Source: Auanema rhodensis
Lineage: Eukaryota > Animalia > Nematoda
Assembly: GCA_964057225.1 (NCBI GenBank)
Contig: OZ059897.1
Span: forward strand, 6,634,001-6,698,000
Length of the DNA: 64,000 nucleotides
Reading direction: 5' to 3'
The notes beneath the pieces were generated by a model. The model searched no databases, was not told where the DNA came from, and worked only from the letters and a program-made list of their open reading frames with translations. Shown piece after piece: positions 30,488 to 64,000 of this stretch (the stretch's first letter is position 1; each line of letters begins with the position of its first letter). A program made the translations under genes and the position numbers.

Positions 30488-31482
30488 TTAGAAATCTTTA
30501 TTACAGGTAATTCCACATACATTGGCATTCTTGGAATACTGTACGACAATAACATCGTTAGCTGACCATCCACCAAATGGCTTGAAACTATTCTTATTTT
30601 GAGGAGCTTCACCAGTAATTGGGGCATTAGCCCACCTGTAAGAATAGAAAACTGAATGTTAATTATGATGCAGAAGTTACCATAACTGAAGATTTTCTTG
30701 ATTAAAACGGGCTTTATCAGCGTTTCCGGTAATCTGACTCCAATCATTTTCATTGGTATAGATAGTGCAAGTAAAATATTGCTGTAAGACAAGAAATAGA
30801 AAGCTGAGTTGAAACATTAATAGAAGTATTTACATTTGCGTTAGCAGCACTTATGATTTGCTTGATGAATTTGATATTCTTAGAAGTATCTTGATTCCAA
30901 TCTTGAGGATTTGTAACCTATAGGATAAAATGTATAATAGAAATAAAGAGAATCATAATTTACCCAAATTAATATATGATTACCATATAAACCACAGTTT
31001 TTCAATCCAGTATTCATGTCAACAAACTGTTCAAAACCACTTTTAGTTCCTTTTGGAGATGGTATCATGTAAATATCTGGTTGTATATTAGAATCTAAAA
31101 CAATATGTTTCAATTCAAAATTTCAACTTGTGAGATCAGACGAAGATGAACAATTGTATCTCTTGGAAATAAGGCTTACATGTCTTAGCAGATTTGTATG
31201 TATTACAAACATTCTTATCAAACATTCCATTGTTCATATTCATGTAAGCTCTGAAAACATGCTGATTGAATATAATAATTTAATATTAGGATATGCCTAA
31301 TGTATATTCTACTAGAGTTGTAACTTGTCGATAGACAGTTCAATTGAGCATCAGATACCGGTTGTTGAAAATCTATGATCTGAGATATAGAAAAATAAAG
31401 TGAAATGATTAGAAGTTGATCAGAATACCTGTGCTGTGGTTATGCCAAACAGTGCAATTCCGAGAAAGATACACAGTTTCAT
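30488..31482 (-). CDS. Secreted lysozyme-like protein (GH25-related nematode lys family, lys-1/2/7/8-like type)
   Basis: Signal peptide MKLCIFLGIALFGITTAQ. Then IIDFQQPVSDAQLNCL, YIRAYMNMNNGMFDKNVC, DIYMIPSPKGTKSGFEQF, ILIWVTNPQDW, NIKFIKQIISAA, TIYTNENDWSQIT, FKPFGGW and VQYSKNANVCGITCNKDF*, colinear with nematode LYS motifs. The model needs one GC-AG intron (31251-31296). Confidence 0.82.
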
Positions 31483-31847
31483 GTTTACGTACGAAATAGA
31501 AAAAGAAATGAGAGTTGCTCTCAAAATGACTCCTTATATTCTTCCTTTGAACTATTTTTCAAAAGATAAGCATCAAAGTTATCAGTGCCTCTCACCATCT
31601 CGCAATCTTTTCCTCTCCTTTTTTTCTTTATATGTCTTTCTCTTTCATCTCGTTATTCTCAATCTCTCTTTCTTTATATTCTTTAAAAATCTTACTCTGA
31701 TGATAGATAAGTTGTCGATTAATTGAAATAATCAGGATCTATGATTTACGTATTTTGATTCTTTAAGCTTTTAGAAAAATTTCATATATTTCTAGAAAAC
31801 CGTCATTTGTGATCAATAGATGATCGTACCAAGTACAGATGAGCAAG

Positions 31848-31871
31848 AAAAAGTTGAAGAAAACCTTAAAA
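31848..31871 (-). terminator. Pol III oligo-T terminators (T4, T4, T5) just 3' of the tRNA, present in each unit
   Basis: Minus strand after the discriminator reads TACC TTTT AAGG TTTT CTTCAAC TTTTT. Confidence 0.8.
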
Positions 31872-31875
31872 GGTA

Positions 31876-31999
31876 TGCACGGAGTGGGATTTGAACCCAC
31901 GCCCTCATACGAGGACCAGAACACCCAACTCTATACACAGAGTAAGAGATGATGAACAACTCTTGAGTCTGGCGCCTTAGACCACTCGGCCATCCGTGC
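31876..31999 (-). tRNA. tRNA-Leu(CAA) with 40-nt intron (31922-31961); first of 141 near-identical copies
   Basis: Minus strand: GCACGGA TG GCCGAGTGGTCTAAGGC G CCAGA CT CAA G [intron] T TCTGG TCCTCGTATGAGGGC GTGGG TTCAAAT CCCAC TCCGTGC A. It has a 7-bp acceptor stem, A and B boxes, a long variable arm, discriminator A, and the intron at the canonical 37/38 position. Confidence 0.97.
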
Positions 32000-34900
32000 T
32001 TCGAACACCGTCATTTGTGATCAATAGATGATCGTACCAAGTACAGATGAGCAAGAAAAAGTTGAAGAAAACCTTAAAAGGTATGCACGGAGTGGGATTT
32101 GAACCCACGCCCTCATACGAGGACCAGAACACCCAACTCTATACACAGAGTAAGAGATGATGAACAACTCTTGAGTCTGGCGCCTTAGACCACTCGGCCA
32201 TCCGTGCTTCGAACACCGTCATTTGTGATCAATAGATGATCGTACCAAGTACAGATGAGCAAGAAAAAGTTGAAAAAAACCTTAAAAGGTATGCACGGAG
32301 TGGGATTTGAACCCACGCCCTCATACGAGGACCAGAACACCCAACTCTATACACAGAGTAAGAGATGATGAACAACTCTTGAGTCTGGCGCCTTAGACCA
32401 CTCGGCCATCCGTGCTTCGAACACCGTCATTTGTGATCAATAGATGATCGTACCAAGTACAGATGAGCAAGAAAAAGTTGAAGAAAACCTTAAAAGGTAT
32501 GCACGGAGTGGGATTTGAACCCACGCCCTCATACGAGGACCAGAACACCCAACTCTATACACAGAGTAAGAGATGATGAACAACTCTTGAGTCTGGCGCC
32601 TTAGACCACTCGGCCATCCGTGCTTCGAACACCGTCATTTGTGATCAATAGATGATCGTACCAAGTACAGATGAGCAAGAAAAAGTTGAAGAAAACCTTA
32701 AAAGGTATGCACGGAGTGGGATTTGAACCCACGCCCTCATACGAGGACCAGAACACCCAACTCTATACACAGAGTAAGAGATGATGAACAACTCTTGAGT
32801 CTGGCGCCTTAGACCACTCGGCCATCCGTGCTTCGAACACCGTCATTTGTGATCAATAGATGATCGTACCAAGTACAGATGAGCAAGAAAAAGTTGAAGA
32901 AAACCTTAAAGGGTATGCACGGAGTGGGATTTGAACCCACGCCCTCATACGAGGACCAGAACACCCAACTCTATACACAGAGTAAGAGATGATGAACAAC
33001 TCTTGAGTCTGGCGCCTTAGACCACTCGGCCATCCGTGCTTCGAACACCGTCATTTGTGATCAATAGATGATCGTACCAAGTACAGATGAGCAAGAAAAA
33101 GTTGAAAAAAACCTTAAAAGGTATGCACGGAGTGGGATTTGAACCCACGCCCTCATACGAGGACCAGAACACCCAACTCTATACACAGAGTAAGAGATGA
33201 TGAACAACTCTTGAGTCTGGCGCCTTAGACCACTCGGCCATCCGTGCTTCGAACACCGTCATTTGTGATCAATAGATGATCGTACCAAGTACAGATGAGC
33301 AAGAAAAAGTTGAAAAAAACCTTAAAAGGTATGCACGGAGTGGGATTTGAACCCACGCCCTCATACGAGGACCAGAACACCCAACTCTATACACAGAGTA
33401 AGAGATGATGAACAACTCTTGAGTCTGGCGCCTTAGACCACTCGGCCATCCGTGCTTCGAACACCGTCATTTGTGATCAATAGATGATCGTACCAAGTAC
33501 AGATGAGCAAGAAAAAGTTGAAGAAAACCTTAAAAGGTATGCACGGAGTGGGATTTGAACCCACGCCCTCATACGAGGACCAGAACACCCAACTCTATAC
33601 ACAGAGTAAGAGATGATGAACAACTCTTGAGTCTGGCGCCTTAGACCACTCGGCCATCCGTGCTTCGAACACCGTCATTTGTGATCAATAGATGATCGTA
33701 CCAAGTACAGATGAGCAAGAAAAAGTTGAAAAAAACCTTAAAAGGTATGCACGGAGTGGGATTTGAACCCACGCCCTCATACGAGGACCAGAACACCCAA
33801 CTCTATACACAGAGTAAGAGATGATGAACAACTCTTGAGTCTGGCGCCTTAGACCACTCGGCCATCCGTGCTTCGAACACCGTCATTTGTGATCAATAGA
33901 TGATCGTACCAAGTACAGATGAGCAAGAAAAAGTTGAAGAAAACCTTAAAAGGTATGCACGGAGTGGGATTTGAACCCACGCCCTCATACGAGGACCAGA
34001 ACACCCAACTCTATACACAGAGTAAGAGATGATGAACAACTCTTGAGTCTGGCGCCTTAGACCACTCGGCCATCCGTGCTTCGAACACCGTCATTTGTGA
34101 TCAATAGATGATCGTACCAAGTACAGATGAGCAAGAAAAAGTTGAAGAAAACCTTAAAAGGTATGCACGGAGTGGGATTTGAACCCACGCCCTCATACGA
34201 GGACCAGAACACCCAACTCTATACACAGAGTAAGAGATGATGAACAACTCTTGAGTCTGGCGCCTTAGACCACTCGGCCATCCGTGCTTCGAACACCGTC
34301 ATTTGTGATCAATAGATGATCGTACCAAGTACAGATGAGCAAGAAAAAGTTGAAGAAAACCTTAAAGGGTATGCACGGAGTGGGATTTGAACCCACGCCC
34401 TCATACGAGGACCAGAACACCCAACTCTATACACAGAGTAAGAGATGATGAACAACTCTTGAGTCTGGCGCCTTAGACCACTCGGCCATCCGTGCTTCGA
34501 ACACCGTCATTTGTGATCAATAGATGATCGTACCAAGTACAGATGAGCAAGAAAAAGTTGAAAAAAACCTTAAAAGGTATGCACGGAGTGGGATTTGAAC
34601 CCACGCCCTCATACGAGGACCAGAACACCCAACTCTATACACAGAGTAAGAGATGATGAACAACTCTTGAGTCTGGCGCCTTAGACCACTCGGCCATCCG
34701 TGCTTCGAACACCGTCATTTGTGATCAATAGATGATCGTACCAAGTACAGATGAGCAAGAAAAAGTTGAAAAAAACCTTAAAAGGTATGCACGGAGTGGG
34801 ATTTGAACCCACGCCCTCATACGAGGACCAGAACACCCAACTCTATACACAGAGTAAGAGATGATGAACAACTCTTGAGTCTGGCGCCTTAGACCACTCG

Positions 34901-36451
34901 GCCATCCGTGCTTCGAACACCGTCATTTGTGATCAATAGATGATCGTACCAAGTACAGATGAGCAAGAAAAAGTTGAAGAAAACCTTAAAAGGTATGCAC
35001 GGAGTGGGATTTGAACCCACGCCCTCATACGAGGACCAGAACACCCAACTCTATACACAGAGTAAGAGATGATGAACAACTCTTGAGTCTGGCGCCTTAG
35101 ACCACTCGGCCATCCGTGCTTCGAACACCGTCATTTGTGATCAATAGATGATCGTACCAAGTACAGATGAGCAAGAAAAAGTTGAAGAAAACCTTAAAAG
35201 GTATGCACGGAGTGGGATTTGAACCCACGCCCTCATACGAGGACCAGAACACCCAACTCTATACACAGAGTAAGAGATGATGAACAACTCTTGAGTCTGG
35301 CGCCTTAGACCACTCGGCCATCCGTGCTTCGAACACCGTCATTTGTGATCAATAGATGATCGTACCAAGTACAGATGAGCAAGAAAAAGTTGAAGAAAAC
35401 CTTAAAGGGTATGCACGGAGTGGGATTTGAACCCACGCCCTCATACGAGGACCAGAACACCCAACTCTATACACAGAGTAAGAGATGATGAACAACTCTT
35501 GAGTCTGGCGCCTTAGACCACTCGGCCATCCGTGCTTCGAACACCGTCATTTGTGATCAATAGATGATCGTACCAAGTACAGATGAGCAAGAAAAAGTTG
35601 AAAAAAACCTTAAAAGGTATGCACGGAGTGGGATTTGAACCCACGCCCTCATACGAGGACCAGAACACCCAACTCTATACACAGAGTAAGAGATGATGAA
35701 CAACTCTTGAGTCTGGCGCCTTAGACCACTCGGCCATCCGTGCTTCGAACACCGTCATTTGTGATCAATAGATGATCGTACCAAGTACAGATGAGCAAGA
35801 AAAAGTTGAAGAAAACCTTAAAAGGTATGCACGGAGTGGGATTTGAACCCACGCCCTCATACGAGGACCAGAACACCCAACTCTATACACAGAGTAAGAG
35901 ATGATGAACAACTCTTGAGTCTGGCGCCTTAGACCACTCGGCCATCCGTGCTTCGAACACCGTCATTTGTGATCAATAGATGATCGTACCAAGTACAGAT
36001 GAGCAAGAAAAAGTTGAAGAAAACCTTAAAAGGTATGCACGGAGTGGGATTTGAACCCACGCCCTCATACGAGGACCAGAACACCCAACTCTATACACAG
36101 AGTAAGAGATGATGAACAACTCTTGAGTCTGGCGCCTTAGACCACTCGGCCATCCGTGCTTCGAACACCGTCATTTGTGATCAATAGATGATCGTACCAA
36201 GTACAGATGAGCAAGAAAAAGTTGAAGAAAACCTTAAAAGGTATGCACGGAGTGGGATTTGAACCCACGCCCTCATACGAGGACCAGAACACCCAACTCT
36301 ATACACAGAGTAAGAGATGATGAACAACTCTTGAGTCTGGCGCCTTAGATCACTCGGCCATCCGTGCTTCGAACACCGTCATTTGTGATCAATAGATGAT
36401 CGTACCAAGTACAGATGAGCAAGAAAAAGTTGAAGAAAACCTTAAAAGGTA

Positions 36452-36575
36452 TGCACGGAGTGGGATTTGAACCCACGCCCTCATACGAGGACCAGAACAC
36501 CCAACTCTATACACAGAGTAAGAGATGATGAACAACTCTTGAGTCTGGCGCCTTAGACCACTCGGCCATCCGTGC
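36452..36575 (-). tRNA. tRNA-Leu(CAA), intron-containing, last (23rd) copy of array 1
   Basis: Identical to the consensus copy. Confidence 0.95.
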
Positions 36576-36609
36576 TTCGAACACCGTCATTTGTGATCAA
36601 TAGATGATC

Positions 36610-39468
36610 ATTTTGAAAAAAAAGTTTAGAAGTTAAAATATGATGATTTAATTTTTTATTTATATTTGTTCTTGTTCTACTGCTGATCTCATCTTTCTGT
36701 CTTCGAAAAAGGTAATTGGCTTCCAAGTTTCCGTAAATAGCATTGATATGATCTGCCTAGCACATTTCTGATAATCTTCCAAGAATATTAAAACAACGAG
36801 AGGATTAATGATTGTGAATATTGATGGTAAGACCATCAGATAAGCAGTAACTTCAATTGGAAATGGAATTTGTAACCAACTACAAGCAATTGCCAGAAAT
36901 TGAGGACAAAACACCAAGGAAAATGGTAGAATAGTCTGAGTATGAAGGTTATAAGTGTAAGGAAAGAACGGAAAAAATAACACCTGTATGATGAGTAGCT
37001 TTAGAATTTTCCAATTTCGTTTGACTGCTGATGCCACTCGATGTTGGTTAAGTGTTCTCATAATAGCACAAGACGATATAATCATCGTAATAGTTACCAG
37101 AATCGCCAAAATAAAAATTGAAAATAATAATGAAGCTTTAACAACATTTCCTTCTAAAGCCTTAATTCATTTTACATTACATTTTACCATAAAAACTTGA
37201 TATAGATTCCTTACGGTAACTGAAAATGAGAAGAAAAATCGATTTTTAAGTGAATGATTCAGATAAGTTAGTACTAGTGGCTCTGCTTGCTCCACAGCTT
37301 TTTCATTAGGATGAACAACCATGATTACTGCTGTCATCCACATTGACACAAAAATTATATTGATAGCTAAACTGAGGACTATTCCAACAGGACTACATAG
37401 AAAAACATTCAGTTTTGGCCTGAAACAAGTTATGATTATTTCTGTTCTCTACTTTTTTCACTGGTTTACCTGCATATCACAGCGTATCTCAAGAAAAAAA
37501 TAAATCCCAAAAGACTAACTGTTGCAGCTTCGACGGCACACATGATATACATACAAGTGGCGGCCAAGACATTATTTATCATGAACGGTCCCTCAAATAT
37601 AAGAAACACTCCATCATCTCCAAATATATATATCTAGATAATAATATTTAAAATTACAAGTTTTTTCTAAATATTGAGGACTTTTGTACTTTTCTCTAGT
37701 TATATTTGTCTTTGTTTATATAAATAGTATGTACAAGATATGAAACTTCATATCTGTAGTTTATGATTTGTATTGAGAACTCTATATCGTCACATTTTGA
37801 TGAAACAACATACAATATCAATCAATATAATCGTTATTTTATTAAATAAATTCAAATAATAAATGAAAATACGAAACTTTCTCAATTGAACTATTTTTCT
37901 TAATTGTGTTATTAAATTATTTCATAAAAATTCGGAACTTCATTTAAGAATATTGAGGAATCATCTCGATCTTCCATTAATCTTTGTTGAATTTAACATA
38001 ATAATCTGTTATTTTTTATTTGAATTATGATTATTTGATTGAAAAATTCAAAATTTAGAATTAGGATTTATTTAATGAAGGTATACAAGCTAAAAATAGA
38101 CATGATATCAAAAATTCTGCCAATGATTTTGAGGTAGCTTGATGATAATAATACCTTTTGAAGTGATTTCTGGTTAATAGCAGTCACAAATATATATTAT
38201 TCATCAAATTCTTTAATTATTCATTTCAAAAAGTTAAATAATCTTATATGTTATAAATTGAAAAAGAATATATTTCATTTTAATCTATCTTATACTAATC
38301 CCTGGCTCTAGTTTCATATATAGATCAATTTATATTTCTATTTGATTAATATGAAATATAAAGAGAAAAAATGGTTGTTACTTGTTTTTTTTTGTTTTTT
38401 TTGTAATGGTTTTTGAGTCAAAAAAATTAAATCAATCACTGATATTAAATATAAAGAGCTACTTCAGAAGTTTTCAAAAGATTTGCTTTTACCGGTGTTT
38501 ACACATGTTTGCTAATTTTCAAAAATATTATTATTATCATTTCGGGCAAGGGCATATTCAACTATACATGTGTGCAATGACAATATTAAAATGAAAAATA
38601 TGAAGAAGATTGTGCAATAGGTTTCTGAAGTTTAAAAACTTACAACATTATCAAAACATAAGCCAAATACCAGAGTTATATCAAAGAAAGTATAGAAAAG
38701 TTGAAAAGCACGTTGTATTCTGTCGACAAAGTTTGATTTACATCTCAATTGTATAATAAATAAAAATATATTTAGTATAATAGAAATTATGAATAAAGCC
38801 AGTTGAACACGAAATACTTCGTCAGGATCGATCATGATCAGCCTTAAAACAGAATTAATTAGAAAAACAAAAAGAAATCAATTAACTAAAAGAGAAAATA
38901 TTTGAAATCATTCCTTAAAATTCAGCAACATGGCTTCATTAATTAATTTTCTAAATTAATTTCAATTTTTTTCAAACATTTCAAAGAAATAAAATAAAAT
39001 CTAAAAATGAAAGAATGTGCAGATTATTATCAAACTGGGAAAATATCAGAATCATTCCTTCCGCCTCTTCATGAAATATTTCAAAGTTTACATGATTAAC
39101 ATACATCATTCACACGTTTCGGTTCCTTTTTCTTTATTGGTGTGAACATTTGAAAGTCTATTTGAGAAAAAAACTTGGAGCTCAGTTAGCGGAAAATCAG
39201 GAAAATCTACGAAGACAACCACAATATGAAAGATTTTTCAAAAAGTTCAGAAATGTAAAGTTGGTTCTTCGAGAAACAAAACTGTTTAATTACAGTATAT
39301 ACGTGCATATAATACATATTATTTGACTATTTATATATTTATTAAATAATTTTTTAAATAAAATATGAGTATTAATTAACAATTCCATAGAATATCATGA
39401 ATATTTTTTCTCTAAAATGTAATTTTCGTTGAAATTTATGAACATTTTTTTCAATATTTTTTCTCGAA
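36610..39468. other. 2,859-bp unique insert interrupting the tRNA array, flanked by an 11-bp direct repeat
   Basis: AATAGATGATC occurs at 36599-36609 and 39469-39479. Removing the insert plus one copy of the 11-mer restores a perfect spacer. Confidence 0.85.
36660..38835 (-). CDS. Nematode 7TM chemoreceptor (Str/Srd/Srj superfamily), multi-exon with ~1-kb first intron
   Basis: Exon 1 MIDPDEVFRVQLALFIISIILNIFLFIIQ...FFDITLVFGLCFDNV|gtaagt. Exon 2 ...LIFEGPF...LLGFIFFLRYAVICR|P. Later motifs KILKLLIIQ/TILP and LPSIFTIINPLVVLIFLEDYQK. About seven hydrophobic segments. Confidence 0.85.
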
Positions 39469-39529
39469 AATAGATGATCGTACCAAGTACAGATGAGCAA
39501 GAAAAAGTTGAAGAAAACCTTAAAAGGTA

Positions 39530-39653
39530 TGCACGGAGTGGGATTTGAACCCACGCCCTCATACGAGGACCAGAACACCCAACTCTATACACAGAGTAAG
39601 AGATGATGAACAACTCTTGAGTCTGGCGCCTTAGACCACTCGGCCATCCGTGC
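39530..39653 (-). tRNA. tRNA-Leu(CAA), intron-containing, first copy of array 2
   Basis: Identical to the consensus copy. Confidence 0.95.
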
Positions 39654-40361
39654 TTCGAACACCGTCATTTGTGATCAATAGATAATCGTACCAAGTACAG
39701 ATGAGCAAGAAAAAGTTGAAGAAAACCTTAAAAGGTATGCACGGAGTGGGATTTGAACCCACGCCCTCATACGAGGACCAGAACACCCAACTCTATACAC
39801 AGAGTAAGAGATGATGAACAACTCTTGAGTCTGGCGCCTTAGACCACTCGGCCATCCGTGCTTCGAACACCGTCATTTGTGATCAATAGATGATCGTACC
39901 AAGTACAGATGAGCAAGAAAAAGTTGAAGAAAACCTTAAAAGGTATGCACGGAGTGGGATTTGAACCCACGCCCTCATACGAGGACCAGAACACCCAACT
40001 CTATACACAGAGTAAGAGATGATGAACAACTCTTGAGTCTGGCGCCTTAGACCACTCGGCCATCCCTGCTTCGAACACCGTCATTTGTGATCAATAGATG
40101 ATCGTACCAAGTACAGATGAGCAAGAAAAAGTTGAAGAAAACCTTAAAAGGTATGCACGGAGTGGGATTTGAACCCACGCCCTCATACGAGGACCAGAAC
40201 ACCCAACTCTATACACAGAGTAAGAGATGATGAACAACTCTTGAGTCTGGCGCCTTAGACCACTCGGCCATCCGTGCTTCGAACACCGTCATTTGTGATC
40301 AATAGATAATCGTACCAAGTACAGATGAGCAAGAAAAAGTTGAAGAAAACCTTAAAAGGTA

Positions 40362-40485
40362 TGCACGGAGTGGGATTTGAACCCACGCCCTCATACGAGG
40401 ACCAGAACACCCAACTCTATACACAGAGTAAGAGATGATGAACAACTCTTGAGTGTGGCGCCTTAGAGCACTCGGCCATCCATGC
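40362..40485 (-). pseudogene. Probable tRNA-Leu pseudogene copy (C4U, G19C, G30C); same haplotype at 41818-41941 and 42442-42565
   Basis: Plus strand gagtGtggcgccttagaGcactcggccatccAtgc. This breaks an anticodon-stem pair and the invariant D-loop GG. Confidence 0.65.
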
Positions 40486-52400: not shown

Positions 52401-55400
52401 AGTTGAAGAAAACCTTAAAAGGTATGCACGGAGTGGGATTTGAACCCACGCCCTCATACGAGGACCAGAACACCCAACTCTATACACAGAGTAAGAGATG
52501 ATGAACAACTCTTGAGTCTGGCGCCTTAGAGCACTCGGCCATCCGTGCTTCGAACACCGTCATTTGTGATCACTAGATGATCGTACCAAGTACAGATGAG
52601 CAAGAAAAAGTTGAAGAAAACCTTAAAAGGTATGCACGGAGTGGGATTTGAACCCACGCCCTCATACGAGGACCAGAACACCCAACTCTATACACAGAGT
52701 AAGAGATGATGAACAACTCTTGAGTCTGGCGCCTTAGACCACTCGGCCATCCGTGCTTCGAACACCGTCATTTGTGATCAATAGATGATCGTACCAAGTA
52801 CAGATGAGCAAGAAAAAGTTGAAGAAAACCTTAAAAGGTATGCACGGAGTGGGATTTGAACCCACGCCCTCATACGAGGACCAGAACACCCAACTCTATA
52901 CACAGAGTAAGAGATGATGAACAACTCTTGAGTCTGGCGCCTTAGAGCACTCGGCCATCCGTGCTTCGAACACCGTCATTTGTGATCAATAGATGATCGT
53001 ACCAAGTACAGATGAGCAAGAAAAAGTTGAAGAAAACCTTAAAAGGTATGCACGGAGTGGGATTTGAACCCACGCCCTCATACGAGGACCAGAACACCCA
53101 ACTCTATACACAGAGTAAGAGATGATGAACAACTCTTGAGTCTGGCGCCTTAGAGCACTCGGCCATCCGTGCTTCGAACACCGTCATTTGTGATCACTAG
53201 ATGATCGTACCAAGTACAGATGAGCAAGAAAAAGTTGAAGAAAACCTTAAAAGGTATGCACGGAGTGGGATTTGAACCCACGCCCTCATACGAGGACCAG
53301 AACACCCAACTCTATACACAGAGTAAGAGATGATGAACAACTCTTGAGTCTGGCGCCTTAGAGCACTCGGCCATCCGTGCTTCGAACACCGTCATTTGTG
53401 ATCAATAGATGATCGTACCAAGTACAGATGAGCAAGAAAAAGTTGAAGAAAACCTTAAAAGGTATGCACGGAGTGGGATTTGAACCCACGCCCTCATACG
53501 AGGACCAGAACACCCAACTCTATACACAGAGTAAGAGATGATGAACAACTCTTGAGTCTGGCGCCTTAGAGCACTCGGCCATCCGTGCTTCGAACACCGT
53601 CATTTGTGATCACTAGATGATCGTACCAAGTACAGATGAGCAAGAAAAAGTTGAAGAAAACCTTAAAAGGTATGCACGGAGTGGGATTTGAACCCACGCC
53701 CTCATACGAGGACCAGAACACCCAACTCTATACACAGAGTAAGAGATGATGAACAACTCTTGAGTCTGGCGCCTTAGACCACTCGGCCATCCGTGCTTCG
53801 AACACCGTCATTTGTGATCAATAGATGATCGTACCAAGTACAGATGAGCAAGAAAAAGTTGAAGAAAACCTTAAAAGGTATGCACGGAGTGGGATTTGAA
53901 CCCACGCCCTCATACGAGGACCAGAACACCCAACTCTATACACAGAGTAAGAGATGATGAACAACTCTTGAGTCTGGCGCCTTAGAGCACTCGGCCATCC
54001 GTGCTTCGAACACCGTCATTTGTGATCAATAGATGATCGTACCAAGTACAGATGAGCAAGAAAAAGTTGAAGAAAACCTTAAAAGGTATGCACGGAGTGG
54101 GATTTGAACCCACGCCCTCATACGAGGACCAGAACACCCAACTCTATACACAGAGTAAGAGATGATGAACAACTCTTGAGTCTGGCGCCTTAGAGCACTC
54201 GGCCATCCGTGCTTCGAACACCGTCATTTGTGATCACTAGATGATCGTACCAAGTACAGATGAGCAAGAAAAAGTTGAAGAAAACCTTAAAAGGTATGCA
54301 CGGAGTGGGATTTGAACCCACGCCCTCATACGAGGACCAGAACACCCAACTCTATACACAGAGTAAGAGATGATGAACAACTCTTGAGTCTGGCGCCTTA
54401 GACCACTCGGCCATCCGTGCTTCGAACACCGTCATTTGTGATCAATAGATGATCGTACCAAGTACAGATGAGCAAGAAAAAGTTGAAGAAAACCTTAAAA
54501 GGTATGCACGGAGTGGGATTTGAACCCACGCCCTCATACGAGGACCAGAACACCCAACTCTATACACAGAGTAAGAGATGATGAACAACTCTTGAGTCTG
54601 GCGCCTTAGACCACTCGGCCATCCGTGCTTCGAACACCGTCATTTGTGATCAATAGATGATCGTACCAAGTACAGATGAGCAAGAAAAAGTTGAAGAAAA
54701 CCTTAAAAGGTATGCACGGAGTGGGATTTGAACCCACGCCCTCATACGAGGACCAGAACACCCAACTCTATACACAGAGTAAGAGATGATGAACAACTCT
54801 TGAGTCTGGCGCCTTAGACCACTCGGCCATCCGTGCTTCGAACACCGTCATTTGTGATCAATAGATGATCGTACCAAGTACAGATGAGCAAGAAAAAGTT
54901 GAAGAAAACCTTAAAAGGTATGCACGGAGTGGGATTTGAACCCACGCCCTCATACGAGGACCAGAACACCCAACTCTATACACAGAGTAAGAGATGATGA
55001 ACAACTCTTGAGTCTGGCGCCTTAGACCACTCGGCCATCCGTGCTTCGAACACCGTCATTTGTGATCAATAGATGATCGTACCAAGTACAGATGAGCAAG
55101 AAAAAGTTGAAGAAAACCTTAAAAGGTATGCACGGAGTGGGATTTGAACCCACGCCCTCATACGAGGACCAGAACACCCAACTCTATACACAGAGTAAGA
55201 GATGATGAACAACTCTTGAGTCTGGCGCCTTAGACCACTCGGCCATCCGTGCTTCGAACACCGTCATTTGTGATCAATAGATGATCGTACCAAGTACAGA
55301 TGAGCAAGAAAAAGTTGAAGAAAACCTTAAAAGGTGTGCACGGAGTGGGATTTGAACCCACGCCCTCATACGAGGACCAGAACACCCAACTCTATACACA

Positions 55401-58400
55401 GAGTAAGAGATGATGAACAACTCTTGAGTCTGGCGCCTTAGACCACTCGGCCATCCGTGCTTCGAACACCGTCATTTGTGATCAATAGATGATCGTACCA
55501 AGTACAGATGAGCAAGAAAAAGTTGAAGAAAACCTTAAAAGGTATGCACGGAGTGGGATTTGAACCCACGCCCTCATACGAGGACCAGAACACCCAACTC
55601 TATACACAGAATAAGAGATGATGAACAACTCTTGAGTCTGGCGCCTTAGAGCACTCGGCCATCCGTGTTTCGAACACCTTCATTTGTGATCAATAGATGA
55701 TCGTACCAAGTACAGATGAGCAAGAAAAAGTTGAAGAAAACCTTAAAAGGTATGCACGGAGTGGGATTTGAACCCACGCCCTCATACGAGGACCAGAACA
55801 CCCAACTCTATGCACAGAGTAAGAGATGATGAACAACTCTTGAGTCTGGCGCCTTAGACCACTCGGCCATCCGTGCTTCGAACACCGTCATTTGTGATCA
55901 CTAGATGATCGTACCAAGTACAGATGAGCAAGAAAAAGTTGAAGAAAACCTTAAAATGTATGCACGGAGTGGGATTTGAACCCACGCCCTCATACGAGGA
56001 CCAGAACACCCAACTCTATACACAGAGTAAGAGATGATGAACAACTCTTGAGTCTGGCGCCTTAGACCACTCGGCCATCCGTGCTTCGAACACCGTCATT
56101 TGTGATCAATAGATGATCGTACCAAGTACAGATGAGCAAGAAAAAGTTGAAGAAAACCTTAAAAGGTATGCACGGAGTGGGATTTGAACCCACGCCCTCA
56201 TACGAGGACCAGAACACCCAACTCTATACACAGAGTAAGAGATGATGAACAACTCTTGAGTCTGGCGCCTTAGACCACTCGGCCATCCGTGCTTCGAACA
56301 CCGTCATTTGTGATCAATAGATGATCGTACCAAGTACAGATGAGCAAGAAAAAGTTGAAGAAAACCTTAAAAGGTATGCACGGAGTGGGATTTGAACCCA
56401 CGCCCTCATACGAGGACCAGAACACCCAACTCTATACACAGAGTAAGAGATGATGAACAACTCTTGAGTCTGGCGCCTTAGACCACTCGGCCATCCGTGC
56501 TTCGAACACCGTCATTTGTGATCAATAGATGATCGTACCAAGTACAGATGAGCAAGAAAAAGTTGAAGAAAACCTTAAAAGGTATGCACGGAGTGGGATT
56601 TGAACCCACGCCCTCATACGAGGACCAGAACACCCAACTCTATACACAGAGTAAGAGATGATGAACAACTCTTGAGTCTGGCGCCTTAGACCACTCGGCC
56701 ATCCGTGCTTCGAACACCGTCATTTGTGATCAATAGATGATCGTACCAAGTACAGATGAGCAAGAAAAAGTTGAAGAAAACCTTAAAGGGTATGCACGGA
56801 GTGGGATTTGAACCCACGCCCTCATACGAGGACCAGAACACCCAACTCTATACACAGAGTAAGAGATGATGAACAACTCTTGAGTCTGGCGCCTTAGACC
56901 ACTCGGCCATCCGTGCTTCGAACACCGTCATTTGTGATCAATAGATGATCGTACCAAGTACAGATGAGCAAGAAAAAGTTGAAAAAAACCTTAAAAGGTA
57001 TGCACGGAGTGGGATTTGAACCCACGCCCTCATACGAGGACCAGAACACCCAACTCTATACACAGAGTAAGAGATGATGAACAACTCTTGAGTCTGGCGC
57101 CTTAGAGCACTCGGCCATCCGTGCTTCGAACACCGTCATTTGTGATCACTAGATGATCGTACCAAGTACAGATGAGCAAGAAAAAATTGAAGAAAATCTT
57201 AAAAGGTATGCACGGAGTGGGATTTGAACCCACGCCCTCATACGAGGACCAGAACACCCAACTCTATACACAGAGTAAGAGATGATGAACAACTCTTGAG
57301 TCTGGCGCCTTAGACCACTCGGCCATCCGTGCTTCGAACACCGTCATTTGTGATCAATAGATGATCGTACCAAGTACAGATGAGCAAGAAAAAGTTGAAG
57401 AAAACCTTAAAAGGTATGCACGGAGTGGGATTTGAACCCACGCCCTCATACGAGGACCAGAACACCCAACTCTATACACAGAGTAAGAGATGATGAACAA
57501 CTCTTGAGTCTGGCGCCTTAGACCACTCGGCCATCCGTGCTTCGAACACCGTCATTTGTGATCAATAGATGATCGTACCAAGTACAGATGAGCAAGAAAA
57601 AGTTGAAGAAAACCTTAAAAGGTATGCACGGAGTGGGATTTGAACCCACGCCCTCATACGAGGACCAGAACACCCAACTCTATACACAGAGTAAGAGATG
57701 ATGAACAACTCTTGAGTCTGGCGCCTTAGACCACTCGGCCATCCGTGCTTCGAACACCGTCATTTGTGATCAATAGATGATCGTACCAAGTACAGATGAG
57801 CAAGAAAAAGTTGAAGAAAACCTTAAAAGGTATGCACGGAGTGGGATTTGAACCCACGCCCTCATACGAGGACCAGAACACCCAACTCTATACACAGAGT
57901 AAGAGATGATGAACAACTCTTGAGTCTGGCGCCTTAGACCACTCGGCCATCCGTGCTTCGAACACCGTCATTTGTGATCAATAGATGATCGTACCAAGTA
58001 CAGATGAGCAAGAAAAAGTTGAAGAAAACCTTAAAAGGTATGCACGGAGTGGGATTTGAACCCACGCCCTCATACGAGGACCAGAACACCCAACTCTATA
58101 CACAGAGTAAGAGATGATGAACAACTCTTGAGTCTGGCGCCTTAGACCACTCGGCCATCCGTGCTTCGAACACCGTCATTTGTGATCAATAGATGATCGT
58201 ACCAAGTACAGATGAGCAAGAAAAAGTTGAAGAAAACCTTAAAAGGTGTGCACGGAGTGGGATTTGAACCCACGCCCTCATACGAGGACCAGAACACCCA
58301 ACTCTATACACAGAGTAAGAGATGATGAACAACTCTTGAGTCTGGCGCCTTAGACCACTCGGCCATCCGTGCTTCGAACACCGTCATTTGTGATCAATAG

Positions 58401-61400
58401 ATGATCGTACCAAGTACAGATGAGCAAGAAAAAGTTGAAGAAAACCTTAAAAGGTATGCACGGAGTGGGATTTGAACCCACGCCCTCATACGAGGACCAG
58501 AACACCCAACTCTATACACAGAATAAGAGATGATGAACAACTCTTGAGTCTGGCGCCTTAGAGCACTCGGCCATCCGTGTTTCGAACACCTTCATTTGTG
58601 ATCAATAGATGATCGTACCAAGTACAGATGAGCAAGAAAAAGTTGAAGAAAACCTTAAAAGGTATGCACGGAGTGGGATTTGAACCCACGCCCTCATACG
58701 AGGACCAGAACACCCAACTCTATGCACAGAGTAAGAGATGATGAACAACTCTTGAGTCTGGCGCCTTAGACCACTCGGCCATCCGTGCTTCGAACACCGT
58801 CATTTGTGATCACTAGATGATCGTACCAAGTACAGATGAGCAAGAAAAAGTTGAAGAAAACCTTAAAATGTATGCACGGAGTGGGATTTGAACCCACGCC
58901 CTCATACGAGGACCAGAACACCCAACTCTATACACAGAGTAAGAGATGATGAACAACTCTTGAGTCTGGCGCCTTAGACCACTCGGCCATCCGTGCTTCG
59001 AACACCGTCATTTGTGATCAATAGATGATCGTACCAAGTACAGATGAGCAAGAAAAAGTTGAAGAAAACCTTAAAAGGTATGCACGGAGTGGGATTTGAA
59101 CCCACGCCCTCATACGAGGACCAGAACACCCAACTCTATACACAGAGTAAGAGATGATGAACAACTCTTGAGTCTGGCGCCTTAGACCACTCGGCCATCC
59201 GTGCTTCGAACACCGTCATTTGTGATCAATAGATGATCGTACCAAGTACAGATGAGCAAGAAAAAGTTGAAGAAAACCTTAAAAGGTGTGCACGGAGTGG
59301 GATTTGAACCCACGCCCTCATACGAGGACCAGAACACCCAACTCTATACACAGAGTAAGAGATGATGAACAACTCTTGAGTCTGGCGCCTTAGACCACTC
59401 GGCCATCCGTGCTTCGAACACCGTCATTTGTGATCAATAGATGATCGTACCAAGTACAGATGAGCAAGAAAAAGTTGAAGAAAACCTTAAAAGGTATGCA
59501 CGGAGTGGGATTTGAACCCACGCCCTCATACGAGGACCAGAACACCCAACTCTATACACAGAATAAGAGATGATGAACAACTCTTGAGTCTGGCGCCTTA
59601 GAGCACTCGGCCATCCGTGTTTCGAACACCTTCATTTGTGATCAATAGATGATCGTACCAAGTACAGATGAGCAAGAAAAAGTTGAAGAAAACCTTAAAA
59701 GGTATGCACGGAGTGGGATTTGAACCCACGCCCTCATACGAGGACCAGAACACCCAACTCTATGCACAGAGTAAGAGATGATGAACAACTCTTGAGTCTG
59801 GCGCCTTAGACCACTCGGCCATCCGTGCTTCGAACACCGTCATTTGTGATCACTAGATGATCGTACCAAGTACAGATGAGCAAGAAAAAGTTGAAGAAAA
59901 CCTTAAAATGTATGCACGGAGTGGGATTTGAACCCACGCCCTCATACGAGGACCAGAACACCCAACTCTATACACAGAGTAAGAGATGATGAACAACTCT
60001 TGAGTCTGGCGCCTTAGACCACTCGGCCATCCGTGCTTCGAACACCGTCATTTGTGATCAATAGATGATCGTACCAAGTACAGATGAGCAAGAAAAAGTT
60101 GAAGAAAACCTTAAAAGGTATGCACGGAGTGGGATTTGAACCCACGCCCTCATACGAGGACCAGAACACCCAACTCTATACACAGAGTAAGAGATGATGA
60201 ACAACTCTTGAGTCTGGCGCCTTAGACCACTCGGCCATCCGTGCTTCGAACACCGTCATTTGTGATCAATAGATGATCGTACCAAGTACAGATGAGCAAG
60301 AAAAAGTTGAAGAAAACCTTAAAAGGTATGCACGGAGTGGGATTTGAACCCACGCCCTCATACGAGGACCAGAACACCCAACTCTATACACAGAGTAAGA
60401 GATGATGAACAACTCTTGAGTCTGGCGCCTTAGACCACTCGGCCATCCGTGCTTCGAACACCGTCATTTGTGATCAATAGATGATCGTACCAAGTACAGA
60501 TGAGCAAGAAAAAGTTGAAGAAAACCTTAAAAGGTATGCACGGAGTGGGATTTGAACCCACGCCCTCATACGAGGACCAGAACACCCAACTCTATACACA
60601 GAGTAAGAGATGATGAACAACTCTTGAGTCTGGCGCCTTAGACCACTCGGCCATCCGTGCTTCGAACACCGTCATTTGTGATCAATAGATGATCGTACCA
60701 AGTACAGATGAGCAAGAAAAAGTTGAAGAAAACCTTAAAAGTTATGCACGGAGTGGGATTTGAACCCACGCCCTCATACGAGGACCAGAACACCCAACTC
60801 TATACACAGAGTAAGAGATGATGAACAACTCTTGAGTCTGGCGCCTTAGACCACTCGGCCATCCGTGCTTCGAACACCGTCATTTGTGATCAATAGATGA
60901 TCGTACGAAGTACAGATGAGCAAGAAAAAGTTGAAGAAAACCTTAAAAGGTATGCACGGAGTGGGATTTGAACCCACGCCCTCATACGAGGACCAGAACA
61001 CCCAACTCTATACACAGAGTAAGAGATGATGAACAACTCTTGAGTCTGGCGCCTTAGACCACTCGGCCATCCGTGCTTCGAACACCGTCATTTGTGATCA
61101 ATAGATGATCGTACCAAGTACAGATGAGCAAGAAAAAGTTGAAGAAAACCTTAAAAGGTATGCACGGAGTGGGATTTGAACCCACGCCCTCATACGAGGA
61201 CCAGAACACCCAACTCTATACACAGAGTAAGAGATGATGAACAACTCTTGAGTCTGGCGCCTTAGACCACTCGGCCATCCGTGCTTCGAACACCGTCATT
61301 TGTGATCAATAGATGATCGTACCAAGTACAGATGAGCAAGAAAAAGTTGAAGAAAACCTTAAAAGGTATGCACGGAGTGGGATTTGAACCCACGCCCTCA

Positions 61401-63864
61401 TACGAGGACCAGAACACCCAACTCTATACACAGAGTAAGAGATGATGAACAACTCTTGAGTCTGGCGCCTTAGACCACTCGGCCATCCGTGCTTCGAACA
61501 CCGTCATTTGTGATCAATAGATGATCGTACCAAGTACAGATGAGCAAGAAAAAGTTGAAGAAAACCTTAAAAGTTATGCACGGAGTGGGATTTGAACCCA
61601 CGCCCTCATACGAGGACCAGAACACCCAACTCTATACACAGAGTAAGAGATGATGAACAACTCTTGAGTCTGGCGCCTTAGACCACTCGGCCATCCGTGC
61701 TTCGAACACCGTCATTTGTGATCAATAGATGATCGTACGAAGTACAGATGAGCAAGAAAAAGTTGAAGAAAACCTTAAAAGGTATGCACGGAGTGGGATT
61801 TGAACCCACGCCCTCATACGAGGACCAGAACACCCAACTCTATACACAGAGTAAGAGATGATGAACAACTCTTGAGTCTGGCGCCTTAGACCACTCGGCC
61901 ATCCGTGCTTCGAACACCGTTATTTGTGATCAATAGATGATCGTACCAAGTACAGATGAGCAAGAAAAAGTTGAAGAAAACCTTAAAAGGTATGCACGGA
62001 GTGGGATTTGAACCCACGCCCTCATACGAGGACCAGAACACCCAACTCTATACACAGAGTAAGAGATGATGAACAACTCTTGAGTCTGGCGCCTTAGACC
62101 ACTCGGCCATCCGTGCTTCGAACACCGTCATTTGTGATCAATAGATGATCGTACCAAGTACAGATGAGCAAGAAAAAGTTGAAGAAAACCTTAAAAGGTA
62201 TGCACGGAGTGGGATTTGAACCCACGCCCTCATACGAGGACCAGAACACCCAACTCTATACACAGAGTAAGAGATGATGAACAACTCTTGAGTCTGGCGC
62301 CTTAGACCACTCGGCCATCCGTGCTTCGAACACCGTCATTTGTGATCAATAGATGATCGTACCAAGTACAGATGAGCAAGAAAAAGTTGAAGAAAACCTT
62401 AAAAGGTATGCACGGAGTGGGATTTGAACCCACGCCCTCATACGAGGACCAGAACACCCAACTCTATACACAGAGTAAGAGATGATGAACAACTCTTGAG
62501 TCTGGCGCCTTAGACCACTCGGCCATCCGTGCTTCGAACACCGTCATTTGTGATCAATAGATGATCGTACCAAGTACAGATGAGCAAGAAAAAGTTGAAG
62601 AAAACCTTAAAAGGTATGCACGGAGTGGGATTTGAACCCACGCCCTCATACGAGGACCAGAACACCCAACTCTATACACAGAGTAAGAGATGATGAACAA
62701 CTCTTGAGTCTGGCGCCTTAGAGCACTCGGCCATCCGTGCTTCGAACACCGTCATTTGTGATCAATAGATGATCGTACCAAGTACAGATGAGCAAGAAAA
62801 AGTTGAAGAAAACCTTAAAAGGTATGCACGGAGTGGGATTTGAACCCACGCCCTCATACGAGGACCAGAACACCCAACTCTATACACAGAGTAAGAGATG
62901 ATGAACAACTCTTGAGTCTGGCGCCTTAGACCACTCGGCCATCCGTGCTTCGAACACCGTCATTTGTGATCACTAGATGATCGTACCAAGTACAGATGAG
63001 CAAGAAAAAGTTGAAGAAAACCTTAAAAGGTATGCACGGAGTGGGATTTGAACCCACGCCCTCATACGAGGACCAGAACACCCAACTCTATACACAGAGT
63101 AAGAGATGATGAACAACTCTTGAGTCTGGCGCCTTAGAGCACTCGGCCATCCGTGCTTCGAACACCGTCATTTGTGATCAATAGATGATCGTACCAAGTA
63201 CAGATGAGCAAGAAAAAGTTGAAGAAAACCTTAAAAGATATGCACGAAGTGGGATTTGAACCCACGCCCTCATACGAGGACCAGAACACCCAACTCTATA
63301 CACAGAGTAAGAGATGATGAACAACTCTTGAGTCTGGCGCCTTAGACCACTCGGCCATCCGTGCTTCGAACACCGTCATTTGTGATCACTAGATGATCGT
63401 ACCAAGTACAGATGAGCAAGAAAAAGTTGAAGAAAACCTTAAAAGGTATGCACGGAGTGGGATTTGAACCCACGCCCTCATACGAGGACCAGAACACCCA
63501 ACTCTATACACAGAGTAAGAGATGATGAACAACTCTTGAGTCTGGCGCCTTAGAGCACTCGGCCATCCGTGCTTCGAACACCGTCATTTGTGATCAATAG
63601 ATGATCGTACCAAGTACAGATGAGCAAGAAAAAGTTGAAGAAAACCTTAAAAGATATGCACGGAGTGGGATTTGAACCCACGCCCTCATACGAGGACCAG
63701 AACACCCAACTCTATACACAGAGTAAGAGATGATGAACAACTCTTGAGTCTGGCGCCTTAGACCACTCGGCCATCCGTGCTTCGAACACCGTCATTTGTG
63801 ATCAATAGATGATCGTACCAAGTACAGATGAGCAAGAAAAAGTTGAAGAAAACCTTAAAAGGTA

Positions 63865-63988
63865 TGCACGGAGTGGGATTTGAACCCACGCCCTCATACG
63901 AGGACCAGAACACCCAACTCTATACACAGAGTAAGAGATGATGAACAACTCTTGAGTCTGGCGCCTTAGACCACTCGGCCATCCGTGC
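63865..63988 (-). tRNA. tRNA-Leu(CAA), intron-containing, last complete copy in window
   Basis: Identical to the consensus copy. Confidence 0.95.
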
Positions 63989-64000
63989 TTCGAACACCGT

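What the first reader, a model, noticed from the sequence alone, without database searches (positions are those of the whole stretch)
31799..64000. Satellite-like array of at least 141 intact, intron-containing tRNA-Leu(CAA) genes with a 208-bp period
Seen: half the window is one tRNA gene repeated head-to-tail with an 84-bp spacer and its own terminators. Most copies are perfect, and the array is embedded directly in a gene-dense region, starting ~320 bp from a lysozyme ATG. Known: Leu(CAA) reads only UUG and usually needs a handful of genes; large tRNA tandem arrays are best known from Entamoeba, where a structural role has been proposed. Inference: the copy number far exceeds translational need in this AT-rich genome. 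The array may act as a chromosomal structural element (TFIIIC/condensin platform, boundary, satellite), a source of tRNA fragments or intron RNAs, or a germline/embryo tRNA stockpile.
Basis: partly seen in the sequence, partly recalled or inferred. Interest (0 to 1): 0.88.

Follow-up and report, generated by a model that had tools for sequence, protein, structure and literature searches.

The report
Tandem array of tRNA-Leu(CAA) genes
Half of this window really is one leucine-tRNA gene repeated 141 times head to tail, but it is one of many such tRNA-gene arrays in a nematode genome (probably Auanema rhodense) already reported to hold about 19,500 tRNA genes, and about a quarter of the copies carry damaging changes.

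Summary
There are 141 head-to-tail copies of a 208-bp unit on the minus strand, and the array runs off the window end. Each unit is an 84-bp spacer plus a 124-bp tRNA-Leu(CAA) gene with a 40-nt intron at the canonical position. A 2,859-bp insert carrying a chemoreceptor-like gene, flanked by an 11-bp duplication, splits the array into 23 and 118 copies.

"Intact" is overstated. Only 105 copies have the consensus mature sequence. The other 36 carry exon substitutions, mostly at universally conserved positions (G19C in 22 copies, C56U in 6). Both Pol III promoter boxes fit the consensus in 109 of 141 copies. Exons vary as much as spacers (12/84 against 14/84 variable sites, p=0.83).

Repeated multi-unit variant motifs point to growth by local unequal exchange or slippage. 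Intron retention rules out retroposition.

The scan has already noted many other tRNA arrays in this genome (Phe, Trp, Glu, Arg, Ala, Tyr, Pro, three other Leu anticodons) and this array's continuation in the next window. An August 2026 preprint on Auanema rhodense reports 19,554 tRNA genes and tRNA arrays.

Best reading: a young, homogenised tDNA array with weak selection on single copies, not a Leu(CAA)-specific device.

The parts
31795..36609 (-). Block A of the array: 23 units of 208 bp. tRNA genes run from 31876-31999 to 36452-36575. This is the most homogeneous part, with only one exon variant.
   Evidence: mean 0.79 differences per unit pair within block A
31876..31999 (-). Reference tRNA-Leu(CAA) gene. 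5' exon 31962-31999, 40-nt intron 31922-31961, 3' exon 31876-31921. It has a long variable arm and an A at the discriminator position. The A box is at gene positions 8-18 and the B box at 103-113.
   Evidence: Rfam 51.9 bits. ARAGORN calls (caa) with intron (39,40). The spliced 84-nt form folds as a cloverleaf with a variable arm, and in the precursor the intron pairs with the anticodon loop. Box positions.
32000..32083 (-). 84-bp spacer. Its first 30 nt on the minus strand hold T4, T4 and T5 runs, which look like Pol III terminators for the upstream copy. It also holds a small palindrome (5-nt arms, 5-nt loop), which is where the 2.86-kb insert entered.
36599..36609 (.). Left copy of the 11-bp duplication (AATAGATGATC) at the insert junction.
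   Evidence: Read from the sequence. The unit phase continues across the insert.
36610..39468 (-). 2,859-bp non-repeat insert. It carries a probable complete Str-like serpentine chemoreceptor gene with introns. Exons lie at about 38835-38632, 37609-37466 and 37109-36660.
   Evidence: Two exons give weak but collinear Pfam 7TM_GPCR_Str hits (E=0.071 at profile positions 66-113; E=0.0046 at 244-305). No terminal inverted repeats.
39469..39479 (.). Right copy of the 11-bp duplication.
39469..64000 (-). Block B of the array: 118 tRNA copies from 39530-39653 to 63865-63988. It runs off the window end and holds one 207-bp unit at 49514-49720.
   Evidence: A note on the next window says the array continues for about 15 kb more (not tested).
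31429..31482 (-). It is transcribed away from the array.
   Evidence: Family not confirmed.

Best explanation
This is a real, young tandem array of a nuclear tRNA-Leu(CAA) gene. It was made and kept uniform by DNA-level unequal exchange or replication slippage, not by retroposition.

By sequence, each unit is a self-contained RNA polymerase III gene. It has internal A and B boxes, a canonical intron, and T-run terminators in the spacer. Most copies are therefore probably transcribable and add to the Leu-tRNA pool.

The copy number is about 141 here and probably about 215 in all. It is set mainly by a genome-wide tendency of this nematode (probably Auanema rhodense) to amplify small Pol III/snRNA-type genes into arrays. 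It is not set by a particular need for UUG decoding.

Selection on any single copy is negligible, so damaging variants arise and spread by local duplication. The array behaves like a concertedly evolving multigene family on its way to being a satellite.

Shown: anatomy, copy count in the assembly, variant spectrum, local duplications, insertion into a pre-existing array.

Inferred: transcription, mechanism of amplification, species, somatic retention.
For: Structure and identity of the unit.

DNA-level amplification:
- Every copy keeps the 40-nt intron and the same unit boundaries.
- Multi-unit variant motifs recur locally. A 7-unit motif occurs twice in block A. In block B a 4-unit motif occurs three times, and 2-3-unit motifs three to four times.

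Youth and homogenisation:
- Mean of 2.0 differences per 208 bp between units, about 1%.

Weak per-copy selection:
- Variable sites are 12/84 in exons, 4/40 in the intron and 14/84 in the spacer (Fisher p=0.83).
- 36 of 141 copies carry exon changes. These include G19C in 22 copies, which is also the last base of the A box, and C56U in 6 copies, the key B-box base. Others are G1A in 5 copies, G30C in 3, and single U8G and C61G.

One former array:
- Blocks A and B share spacer variants.
- Their phase is continuous across an 11-bp duplication.

Genome-wide habit:
- Scan notes list arrays for many other anticodons in this genome.
- Preprint 10.64898/2026.08.27.747507 reports 19,554 tRNA loci, of which 215 are pseudogenes, and tandem blocks of 5S, tRNA and U2 genes in A. 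rhodense.

Independent presence:
- 9 public runs hold at least half of the sampled 31-mers of 31100-37000; all 18 listed runs come from 7 studies.
Against: No read-level evidence: copy number, transcription and Pol III occupancy are untested.

The lack of exon constraint rests on only 33 variant types. It excludes strong constraint, not mild constraint. With about 1% divergence the array may simply be too young to show selection.

The consensus is still a perfect tRNA, and 105 of 141 copies are unchanged in the mature sequence. This is also what array-level purifying selection would give.

The species assignment rests on earlier agents' notes and on fit with the preprint, not on a test of mine.
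Confidence: 0.6

Rival explanations
1. Selected dosage or stockpile. The array and its sister arrays are kept large because the animal needs a very high tRNA output, for example in oogenesis or early embryos. Homogenisation plus array-level selection keeps the genes functional.
For: The consensus is a flawless tRNA, and 105 of 141 copies have the consensus mature sequence. All copies keep terminators. The preprint reports only 215 pseudogenes among 19,554 tRNA loci. Unchecked scan notes suggest the rare-codon Leu(CAG) array is much smaller (at least 21 copies) than the Leu AAG, TAA and CAA arrays (about 175-225). UUG is a common Leu codon in a small exon sample.
Against: There is no excess conservation of exons over spacer. 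A variant that breaks a universal tertiary pair and the A box has spread to 16% of copies, and a B-box C56 change to 4%. From my own knowledge, related nematodes such as C. elegans manage with several hundred tRNA genes in all.
Confidence: 0.2
2. Silent tDNA satellite. The copies look intact but are packed in repressive chromatin and hardly transcribed, as in the clustered tRNA genes of Arabidopsis. Dispersed genes supply the tRNA.
For: The relaxed variant pattern. Precedent: the titles and abstracts of PMC7544208 and PMC12308677 describe tandem tDNA clusters that are epigenetically silenced in most tissues.
Against: No chromatin or expression data are available. The promoter boxes and terminators are intact in most copies. 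By gene density the array lies among ordinary genes, not in a satellite block.
Confidence: 0.15
3. Chromosomal structural element (TFIIIC/condensin platform, boundary, pairing or nucleosome-phasing satellite), with the tRNA product secondary.
For: B boxes are dense, one per 208 bp and intact in 134 of 141 copies. Precedents by title and abstract only: the human 1q23.3 tRNA tandem repeat proposed as a boundary element (PMC4041453) and a proposed structural role for Entamoeba arrays.
Against: Many arrays of different tRNAs, periods (160-264 bp) and positions, including inside introns, occur in this genome. That pattern does not suggest a position-specific structural device.
Confidence: 0.07
4. 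Assembly inflation. A real but much shorter array was expanded by the assembler.
For: Copy number was not checked with reads. Units are about 99% identical.
Against: The copies are not clones of one another. Variants form an ordered, non-periodic series of more than 30 haplotypes with local motifs, which is what a long-read assembler needs in order to place reads. A unique 2.86-kb insert anchors both blocks. The preprint's assembly is based on PacBio HiFi reads and counts 19,554 tRNA loci.
Confidence: 0.07

Closest known systems
tRNA gene arrays of Auanema rhodense (preprint 10.64898/2026.08.27.747507, Aug 2026)
   Same: Probably the same genome. The preprint reports 19,554 tRNA loci and tandemly repeated blocks of tRNA, 5S and U2 genes. 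GC content (32.2% reported; non-array half here 24-36%) and gene density fit.
   Different: The preprint gives the arrays one sentence, and only in the context of germline-restricted repeats. It states RNA-gene density is always below 20% per 10 kb. Here tRNA genes fill about 60% of the sequence, and the array sits among ordinary genes. It gives no anatomy, variant analysis or per-anticodon description.
Entamoeba histolytica/invadens tRNA gene arrays
   Same: Head-to-tail tandem units built around tRNA genes, making up a visible share of the genome (mentioned in PMC2888827 and PMC4053983).
   Different: From my own knowledge, Entamoeba units usually hold one to five different tRNA genes with short tandem repeats in the spacers. 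Nearly all of its tRNA genes are in arrays, and a chromosome-end role has been proposed. Here the unit holds a single gene, has a plain spacer, and is internal among genes.
Arabidopsis clustered tDNAs (Ser/Tyr SYY cluster, Pro and Cys clusters)
   Same: Tandem repeats of intact-looking tRNA genes, redundant with dispersed genes and variable between accessions (PMC7544208, PMC12308677, PMC10701932; titles and abstracts).
   Different: Tens of copies rather than hundreds. They are silenced by DNA methylation, which rhabditid nematodes are not known to use (my own knowledge).
Human 1q23.3 tRNA variable-number tandem repeat, and vertebrate oocyte-type arrays (Xenopus 3.18-kb tDNA repeat, zebrafish chromosome 4)
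   Same: Copy-number-variable tandem repeats carrying tRNA genes (PMC4041453 abstract; the Xenopus and zebrafish cases are from my own knowledge).
   Different: Their units are kilobases long and hold several different tRNA genes. Here the unit is a minimal 208 bp with one gene.
Concertedly evolving multigene arrays (5S rDNA, histone, U2 arrays)
   Same: Short units each holding one small gene, homogenised by unequal exchange, with local higher-order variant blocks and weak selection on single copies.
   Different: For tRNAs this layout is unusual in animals. Here it applies to many anticodon families at once.

Membership tests
Eukaryotic nuclear tRNA-Leu(CAA) gene (class II tRNA with canonical intron) | Cloverleaf that matches the tRNA covariance model | tested here: met
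   Rfam RF00005 at 41.5-51.9 bits against a gathering score of 29 for all 28 copies scanned. The spliced form folds as a cloverleaf.
Eukaryotic nuclear tRNA-Leu(CAA) gene (class II tRNA with canonical intron) | Anticodon CAA at positions 34-36, long variable arm, A at the discriminator position | tested here: met
   ARAGORN calls tRNA-Leu (caa) in 118 genes. The variable-arm hairpin appears in the fold. The terminal A is seen in the Rfam alignment.
Eukaryotic nuclear tRNA-Leu(CAA) gene (class II tRNA with canonical intron) | Intron directly 3' of position 37, pairing with the anticodon loop | tested here: met
   ARAGORN reports intron (39,40), a 40-nt intron starting at gene position 39. The precursor fold pairs the anticodon region with the intron.
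Eukaryotic nuclear tRNA-Leu(CAA) gene (class II tRNA with canonical intron) | Internal Pol III promoter (A box TRGCNNAGTGG, B box GGTTCRANNCC) and a downstream T-run terminator | tested here: met
   The consensus unit matches both boxes. A box fits in 116 copies, B box in 134 and both in 109 of 141. Every copy has at least two T4 or longer runs within 30 nt.
Eukaryotic nuclear tRNA-Leu(CAA) gene (class II tRNA with canonical intron) | Transcribed, spliced and aminoacylated | not testable with these tools
No listed run is on record as RNA.
Tandem tDNA array / tDNA satellite | Many head-to-tail copies of a unit holding a tRNA gene, with a constant period | tested here: met
   141 copies. The period is 208 bp in 136 of 137 in-block steps, and one unit is 207 bp.
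Tandem tDNA array / tDNA satellite | Homogenisation with local higher-order variant structure (unequal exchange) | tested here: met
   About 1% mean divergence. Multi-unit haplotype motifs recur.
Tandem tDNA array / tDNA satellite | Copy number confirmed by reads independent of the assembly | not testable with these tools
Germline-restricted (eliminated) tandem repeat of A. rhodense | Lies on the eliminated side of a break site, in repeat-rich, gene-poor, low-coverage DNA | tested here: inconclusive
   No break-site-like palindrome or telomere repeat in the window. The flank holds about one gene per 6 kb, including Aa_trans, KY-like, lysozyme-like and Str-like genes. That matches gene-rich DNA, reported at one gene per 5.3-5.8 kb. 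Only 360 genes lie in about 110 Mb of eliminated DNA. Retention is therefore likely, but coverage was not measured.
tRNA-derived SINE / retroposed copies | RNA-mediated copies: no intron, A-rich or other 3' tail, dispersed with variable target duplications | tested here: not met
   All copies keep the intron and a fixed 84-bp spacer in strict tandem.

The most novel reading that the evidence does not exclude
The array lies in somatically retained, gene-rich DNA. Together with its sister arrays it is actively used, so this nematode runs on roughly thirty times more tRNA genes than its relatives. Array sizes are tuned to codon usage by array-level selection. The tDNA arrays would then be a second phenomenon, distinct from the eliminated satellites, and could not be explained as junk tolerated because the soma discards it.
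Probability: 0.15. Interest if true: 0.7.

Novelty: new member of a known kind. Interest (0 to 1): 0.35.

Why it matters
Taken alone, this array is one more example of a layout already noted for this genome and known from Entamoeba, plants and vertebrates.

What this look adds:
- Copies are not individually protected. Exons vary as much as spacers, and changes that break the promoter or the tertiary structure have spread.
- Growth is by local multi-unit duplication.
- A whole intron-bearing gene has been inserted into the array with an 11-bp target duplication.
- The array probably sits in gene-rich DNA that body cells keep.

The last point matters most. The published explanation for repeat build-up in this species is weak selection in DNA that the soma throws away. 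That explanation would not cover tRNA arrays in retained DNA.

Tried and rejected
**Tool runs that gave nothing**
- Default ARAGORN found no tRNA, because of the intron. Rerun with introns allowed, it called 118.
- A fuzzy regex scan timed out.
I worked on flanks, the spacer and the insert, and ran only local scripts on the window file.

**Lysozyme identity**
- Pfam on five exon-sized pieces, PDB on two and Atlas on one all gave nothing.
- Only a motif-level resemblance to nematode GH25-type lysozymes, from memory, remains.

**Nature of the insert**
- A transposon with terminal inverted repeats is rejected: there are no convincing arms.
- A processed retrocopy is rejected: the gene has introns and there is no A-tail.

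**Other checks**
- No break-site palindrome or telomere repeat in the window.
- No other Rfam family in 1-31790.
- SINE or retroposition origin is rejected (see the membership test).
- The preprint's supplementary tables were not available.
- I did not test species identity. The run organisms are coded, and the protein tools give no taxonomy for exon-sized queries.

Full report
**Observation**

Tandem Repeats Finder reports a 208-bp period at 31795-36609 (23.1 copies, 99% matches) and at 39469-64000 (117.9 copies, 98%). The repeated gene is on the minus strand. Default ARAGORN found nothing. The Rfam tRNA model matches each copy in 31000-40500 over its full length, at 41.5-51.9 bits against a gathering score of 29.

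An in-register walk gives 141 copies: 23 before and 118 after a 2,859-bp interruption. The last copy is at 63865-63988, and the array runs off the window. A first-reader note on the next window says the array goes on for about 15 kb more. That would make about 215 copies, but I could not check it.

**Anatomy of the unit**

The unit is an 84-bp spacer plus a 124-bp gene. The gene is a 38-nt 5' exon, a 40-nt intron and a 46-nt 3' exon.

- The spliced 84-nt sequence folds into a cloverleaf with the long variable arm of a class II tRNA.
- In the precursor, the intron pairs with the anticodon loop, as in other eukaryotic pre-tRNAs.
- The consensus matches the Pol III A-box and B-box patterns.
- The first 30 nt after each gene hold T4, T4 and T5 runs.

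By sequence, each unit is a complete Pol III gene.

**How intact the copies are**

- The gene with its intron is identical to the consensus in 90 copies.
- The mature sequence is the consensus in 105 copies.
- 36 copies carry exon substitutions.

Most of these substitutions hit positions that established tRNA knowledge treats as universal.

| Variant | Copies | What it affects |
|---|---|---|
| G19C | 22 | Partner of C56 in the elbow; last base of the A box |
| C56U | 6 | Core of the B box |
| G1A | 5 | First pair of the acceptor stem |
| G30C | 3 | Anticodon stem pair |
| U8G, G15A, C61G | 1 each | Conserved core positions |

Both promoter boxes fit the consensus in 109 of 141 copies. ARAGORN fails to variant copies. 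"141 intact" is therefore too strong. About three quarters look fully sound.

**Constraint**

Counting distinct variable sites over the array gives 12 of 84 in exons, 4 of 40 in the intron and 14 of 84 in the spacer. Fisher's test of exon against spacer gives p=0.83. Of 33 variant types, 14 fall in exons, against 13.3 expected from length.

There is no sign that the RNA-coding part is better protected than the spacer. With so few events, only strong constraint is excluded. Mean divergence between units is about 1% (2.0 differences per 208 bp), so the array is young or is homogenised quickly.

**Mode of growth**

I wrote each unit as a haplotype letter and read them in order. Block A contains a 7-unit motif twice. 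Block B contains a 4-unit motif three times, and 2-3-unit motifs three to four times. This is the signature of local unequal exchange or slippage that duplicates several units at a time.

All copies keep the intron and the same boundaries. That excludes RNA-mediated copying.

The G19C lineage has diversified into at least eight haplotypes with further exon changes. So a damaging variant has spread unhindered.

**The interruption**

The sequence at 36610-39468 is AT-rich and non-repeat. It is flanked on both sides by the same 11 bases of the spacer (36599-36609 and 39469-39479), and the unit phase continues across it. The target is a small palindrome in the spacer.

The insert carries a minus-strand gene with introns. 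Two of its exons give weak but collinear hits to the nematode serpentine chemoreceptor family Str, at profile positions 66-113 and 244-305. A likely first exon lies at 38835-38632. There are no terminal inverted repeats and no A-tail.

Blocks A and B share spacer variants. A gene-bearing DNA segment therefore entered an existing array with an 11-bp target duplication. The agent is unknown.

**Surroundings**

The left half of the window is 24-36% GC and rich in (TC)n and (AG)n runs. It holds:

- an amino-acid transporter exon (Pfam Aa_trans, E=5.9e-9);
- a KY-like gene exon (Ig-like_KY, E=9.3e-8);
- further exon-like ORFs;
- a secreted-protein gene whose ATG lies 313-317 bp from the array.

I see motif-level resemblance to nematode GH25-type lysozymes from memory, but Pfam, PDB and Atlas searches on single exons gave nothing.

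No other Rfam family occurs in 1-31790. No break-site-like palindrome or telomere repeat occurs in the window.

**Context in the genome and the literature**

Notes of this scan on the same genome list tandem arrays of tRNA-Phe, Ala, Trp, Arg, Glu, Pro, Tyr and Leu(AAG), Leu(TAA) and Leu(CAG). They also list several chromosome-break sites that earlier agents assigned to Auanema rhodense. These are leads, not evidence.

I read the preprint they point to, 10.64898/2026.08.27.747507. It describes:

- a 180.9-Mb HiFi assembly of A. rhodense;
- 19,554 tRNA loci, of which 215 are pseudogenes;
- elimination of about 61% of the germline genome from the soma;
- a passing mention of tandem blocks of 5S, "several" tRNA and U2 genes among germline-restricted repeats.

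The 2019 short-read assembly had about 500 tRNA loci and 32.2% GC. The window fits this species in GC content, gene density and nematode gene families. I did not test the assignment directly.

Leu(CAA) is thus not special. The amplification affects many tRNA families.

**Retained or eliminated?**

The preprint places only 360 of 11,943 genes in the roughly 110 Mb of eliminated DNA. It describes gene-rich regions as retained. The window's flank holds about one gene per 6 kb, which is like the reported 5.3-5.8 kb per gene.

I therefore infer, at roughly 85%, that this array is in somatically retained DNA. If so, the preprint's explanation for repeat accumulation, weak surveillance in DNA that the soma discards, does not cover it.

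The preprint also states that RNA-gene density is always under 20% per 10 kb. That does not match this array, where genes fill about 60% of the sequence.

**Reads**

One search found 18 public runs from 7 studies holding part of 31100-37000. Nine hold at least half of its sampled words, under three organism labels. All are kept as contigs only.

Copy number, somatic depth and expression are therefore untested.

Later work on the array used only local scripts.

**Verdict**

The best explanation is a young, concertedly evolving array of Pol III-competent tRNA-Leu(CAA) genes. It is produced by a genome-wide tendency to amplify small RNA genes, with negligible selection on single copies (confidence 0.6).

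Selected dosage (0.2), a silent satellite (0.15), a structural role (0.07) and assembly inflation (0.07) remain open.

It is a new member of a known kind. The phenomenon is reported in outline for what is probably this species, and the scan has met it repeatedly on other pieces of this genome.

Noticed in passing
window 36599-39479: A 2,859-bp segment carrying a probable complete, intron-bearing Str-like chemoreceptor gene was inserted into the array. It has an 11-bp target duplication at a small palindrome in the spacer. It has no terminal inverted repeats and no A-tail, so the mobilising mechanism is unexplained.
   Followed up: partly
window 39946-52000 and 57000-63500 (block B): The 22 copies with G19C fall into at least eight haplotypes and carry extra exon changes: G1A in 5 copies, C4U in 3, G30C in 3 and C86A in 1. 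That is about 0.55 further changes per copy, against about 0.13 in the other 119 copies. It may be a decaying sub-lineage, but the events are few and not independent.
   Followed up: partly
window 31876-36575 against 39530-63988: Block A, next to the lysozyme-like gene, is much more uniform than block B (0.79 against 2.18 mean differences per unit pair). It has only one exon variant in 23 copies, against 35 of 118 in block B.
   Followed up: no
window 15265-15438 and 16382-16633 (minus strand); 12725-13264 (plus strand); 348-566 (minus strand): Exons of a KY-like (transglutaminase-like) gene and of an amino-acid transporter, and a piece that looks like the junction before the membrane span of a receptor. 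Together they show that the flank is ordinary gene-rich DNA.
   Followed up: partly
window 2904-30391: Many (TC)n and (AG)n microsatellites of 30-90 bp, at least twelve, scattered through the non-array half.
   Followed up: no
window 49514-49720: The single 207-bp unit has a one-base deletion near the 3' end of the spacer, eleven bases upstream of the tRNA start, plus one substitution.
   Followed up: yes
public runs for window 31100-37000: Runs under two further organism labels hold 0.81-0.89 of the exact 31-mers, so they are probably the same species under other names. Three other labels hold 0.08-0.12, about what the conserved tRNA exons alone would give. Four possible RNA runs hold 0.13-0.20. 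None could be laid.
   Followed up: no
preprint 10.64898/2026.08.27.747507, section on tandem repeats: The statement that non-coding RNA loci always cover less than 20% of a 10-kb window does not fit this array, where tRNA genes cover about 60%. Either the figure was computed differently or arrays like this one were not considered.
   Followed up: no
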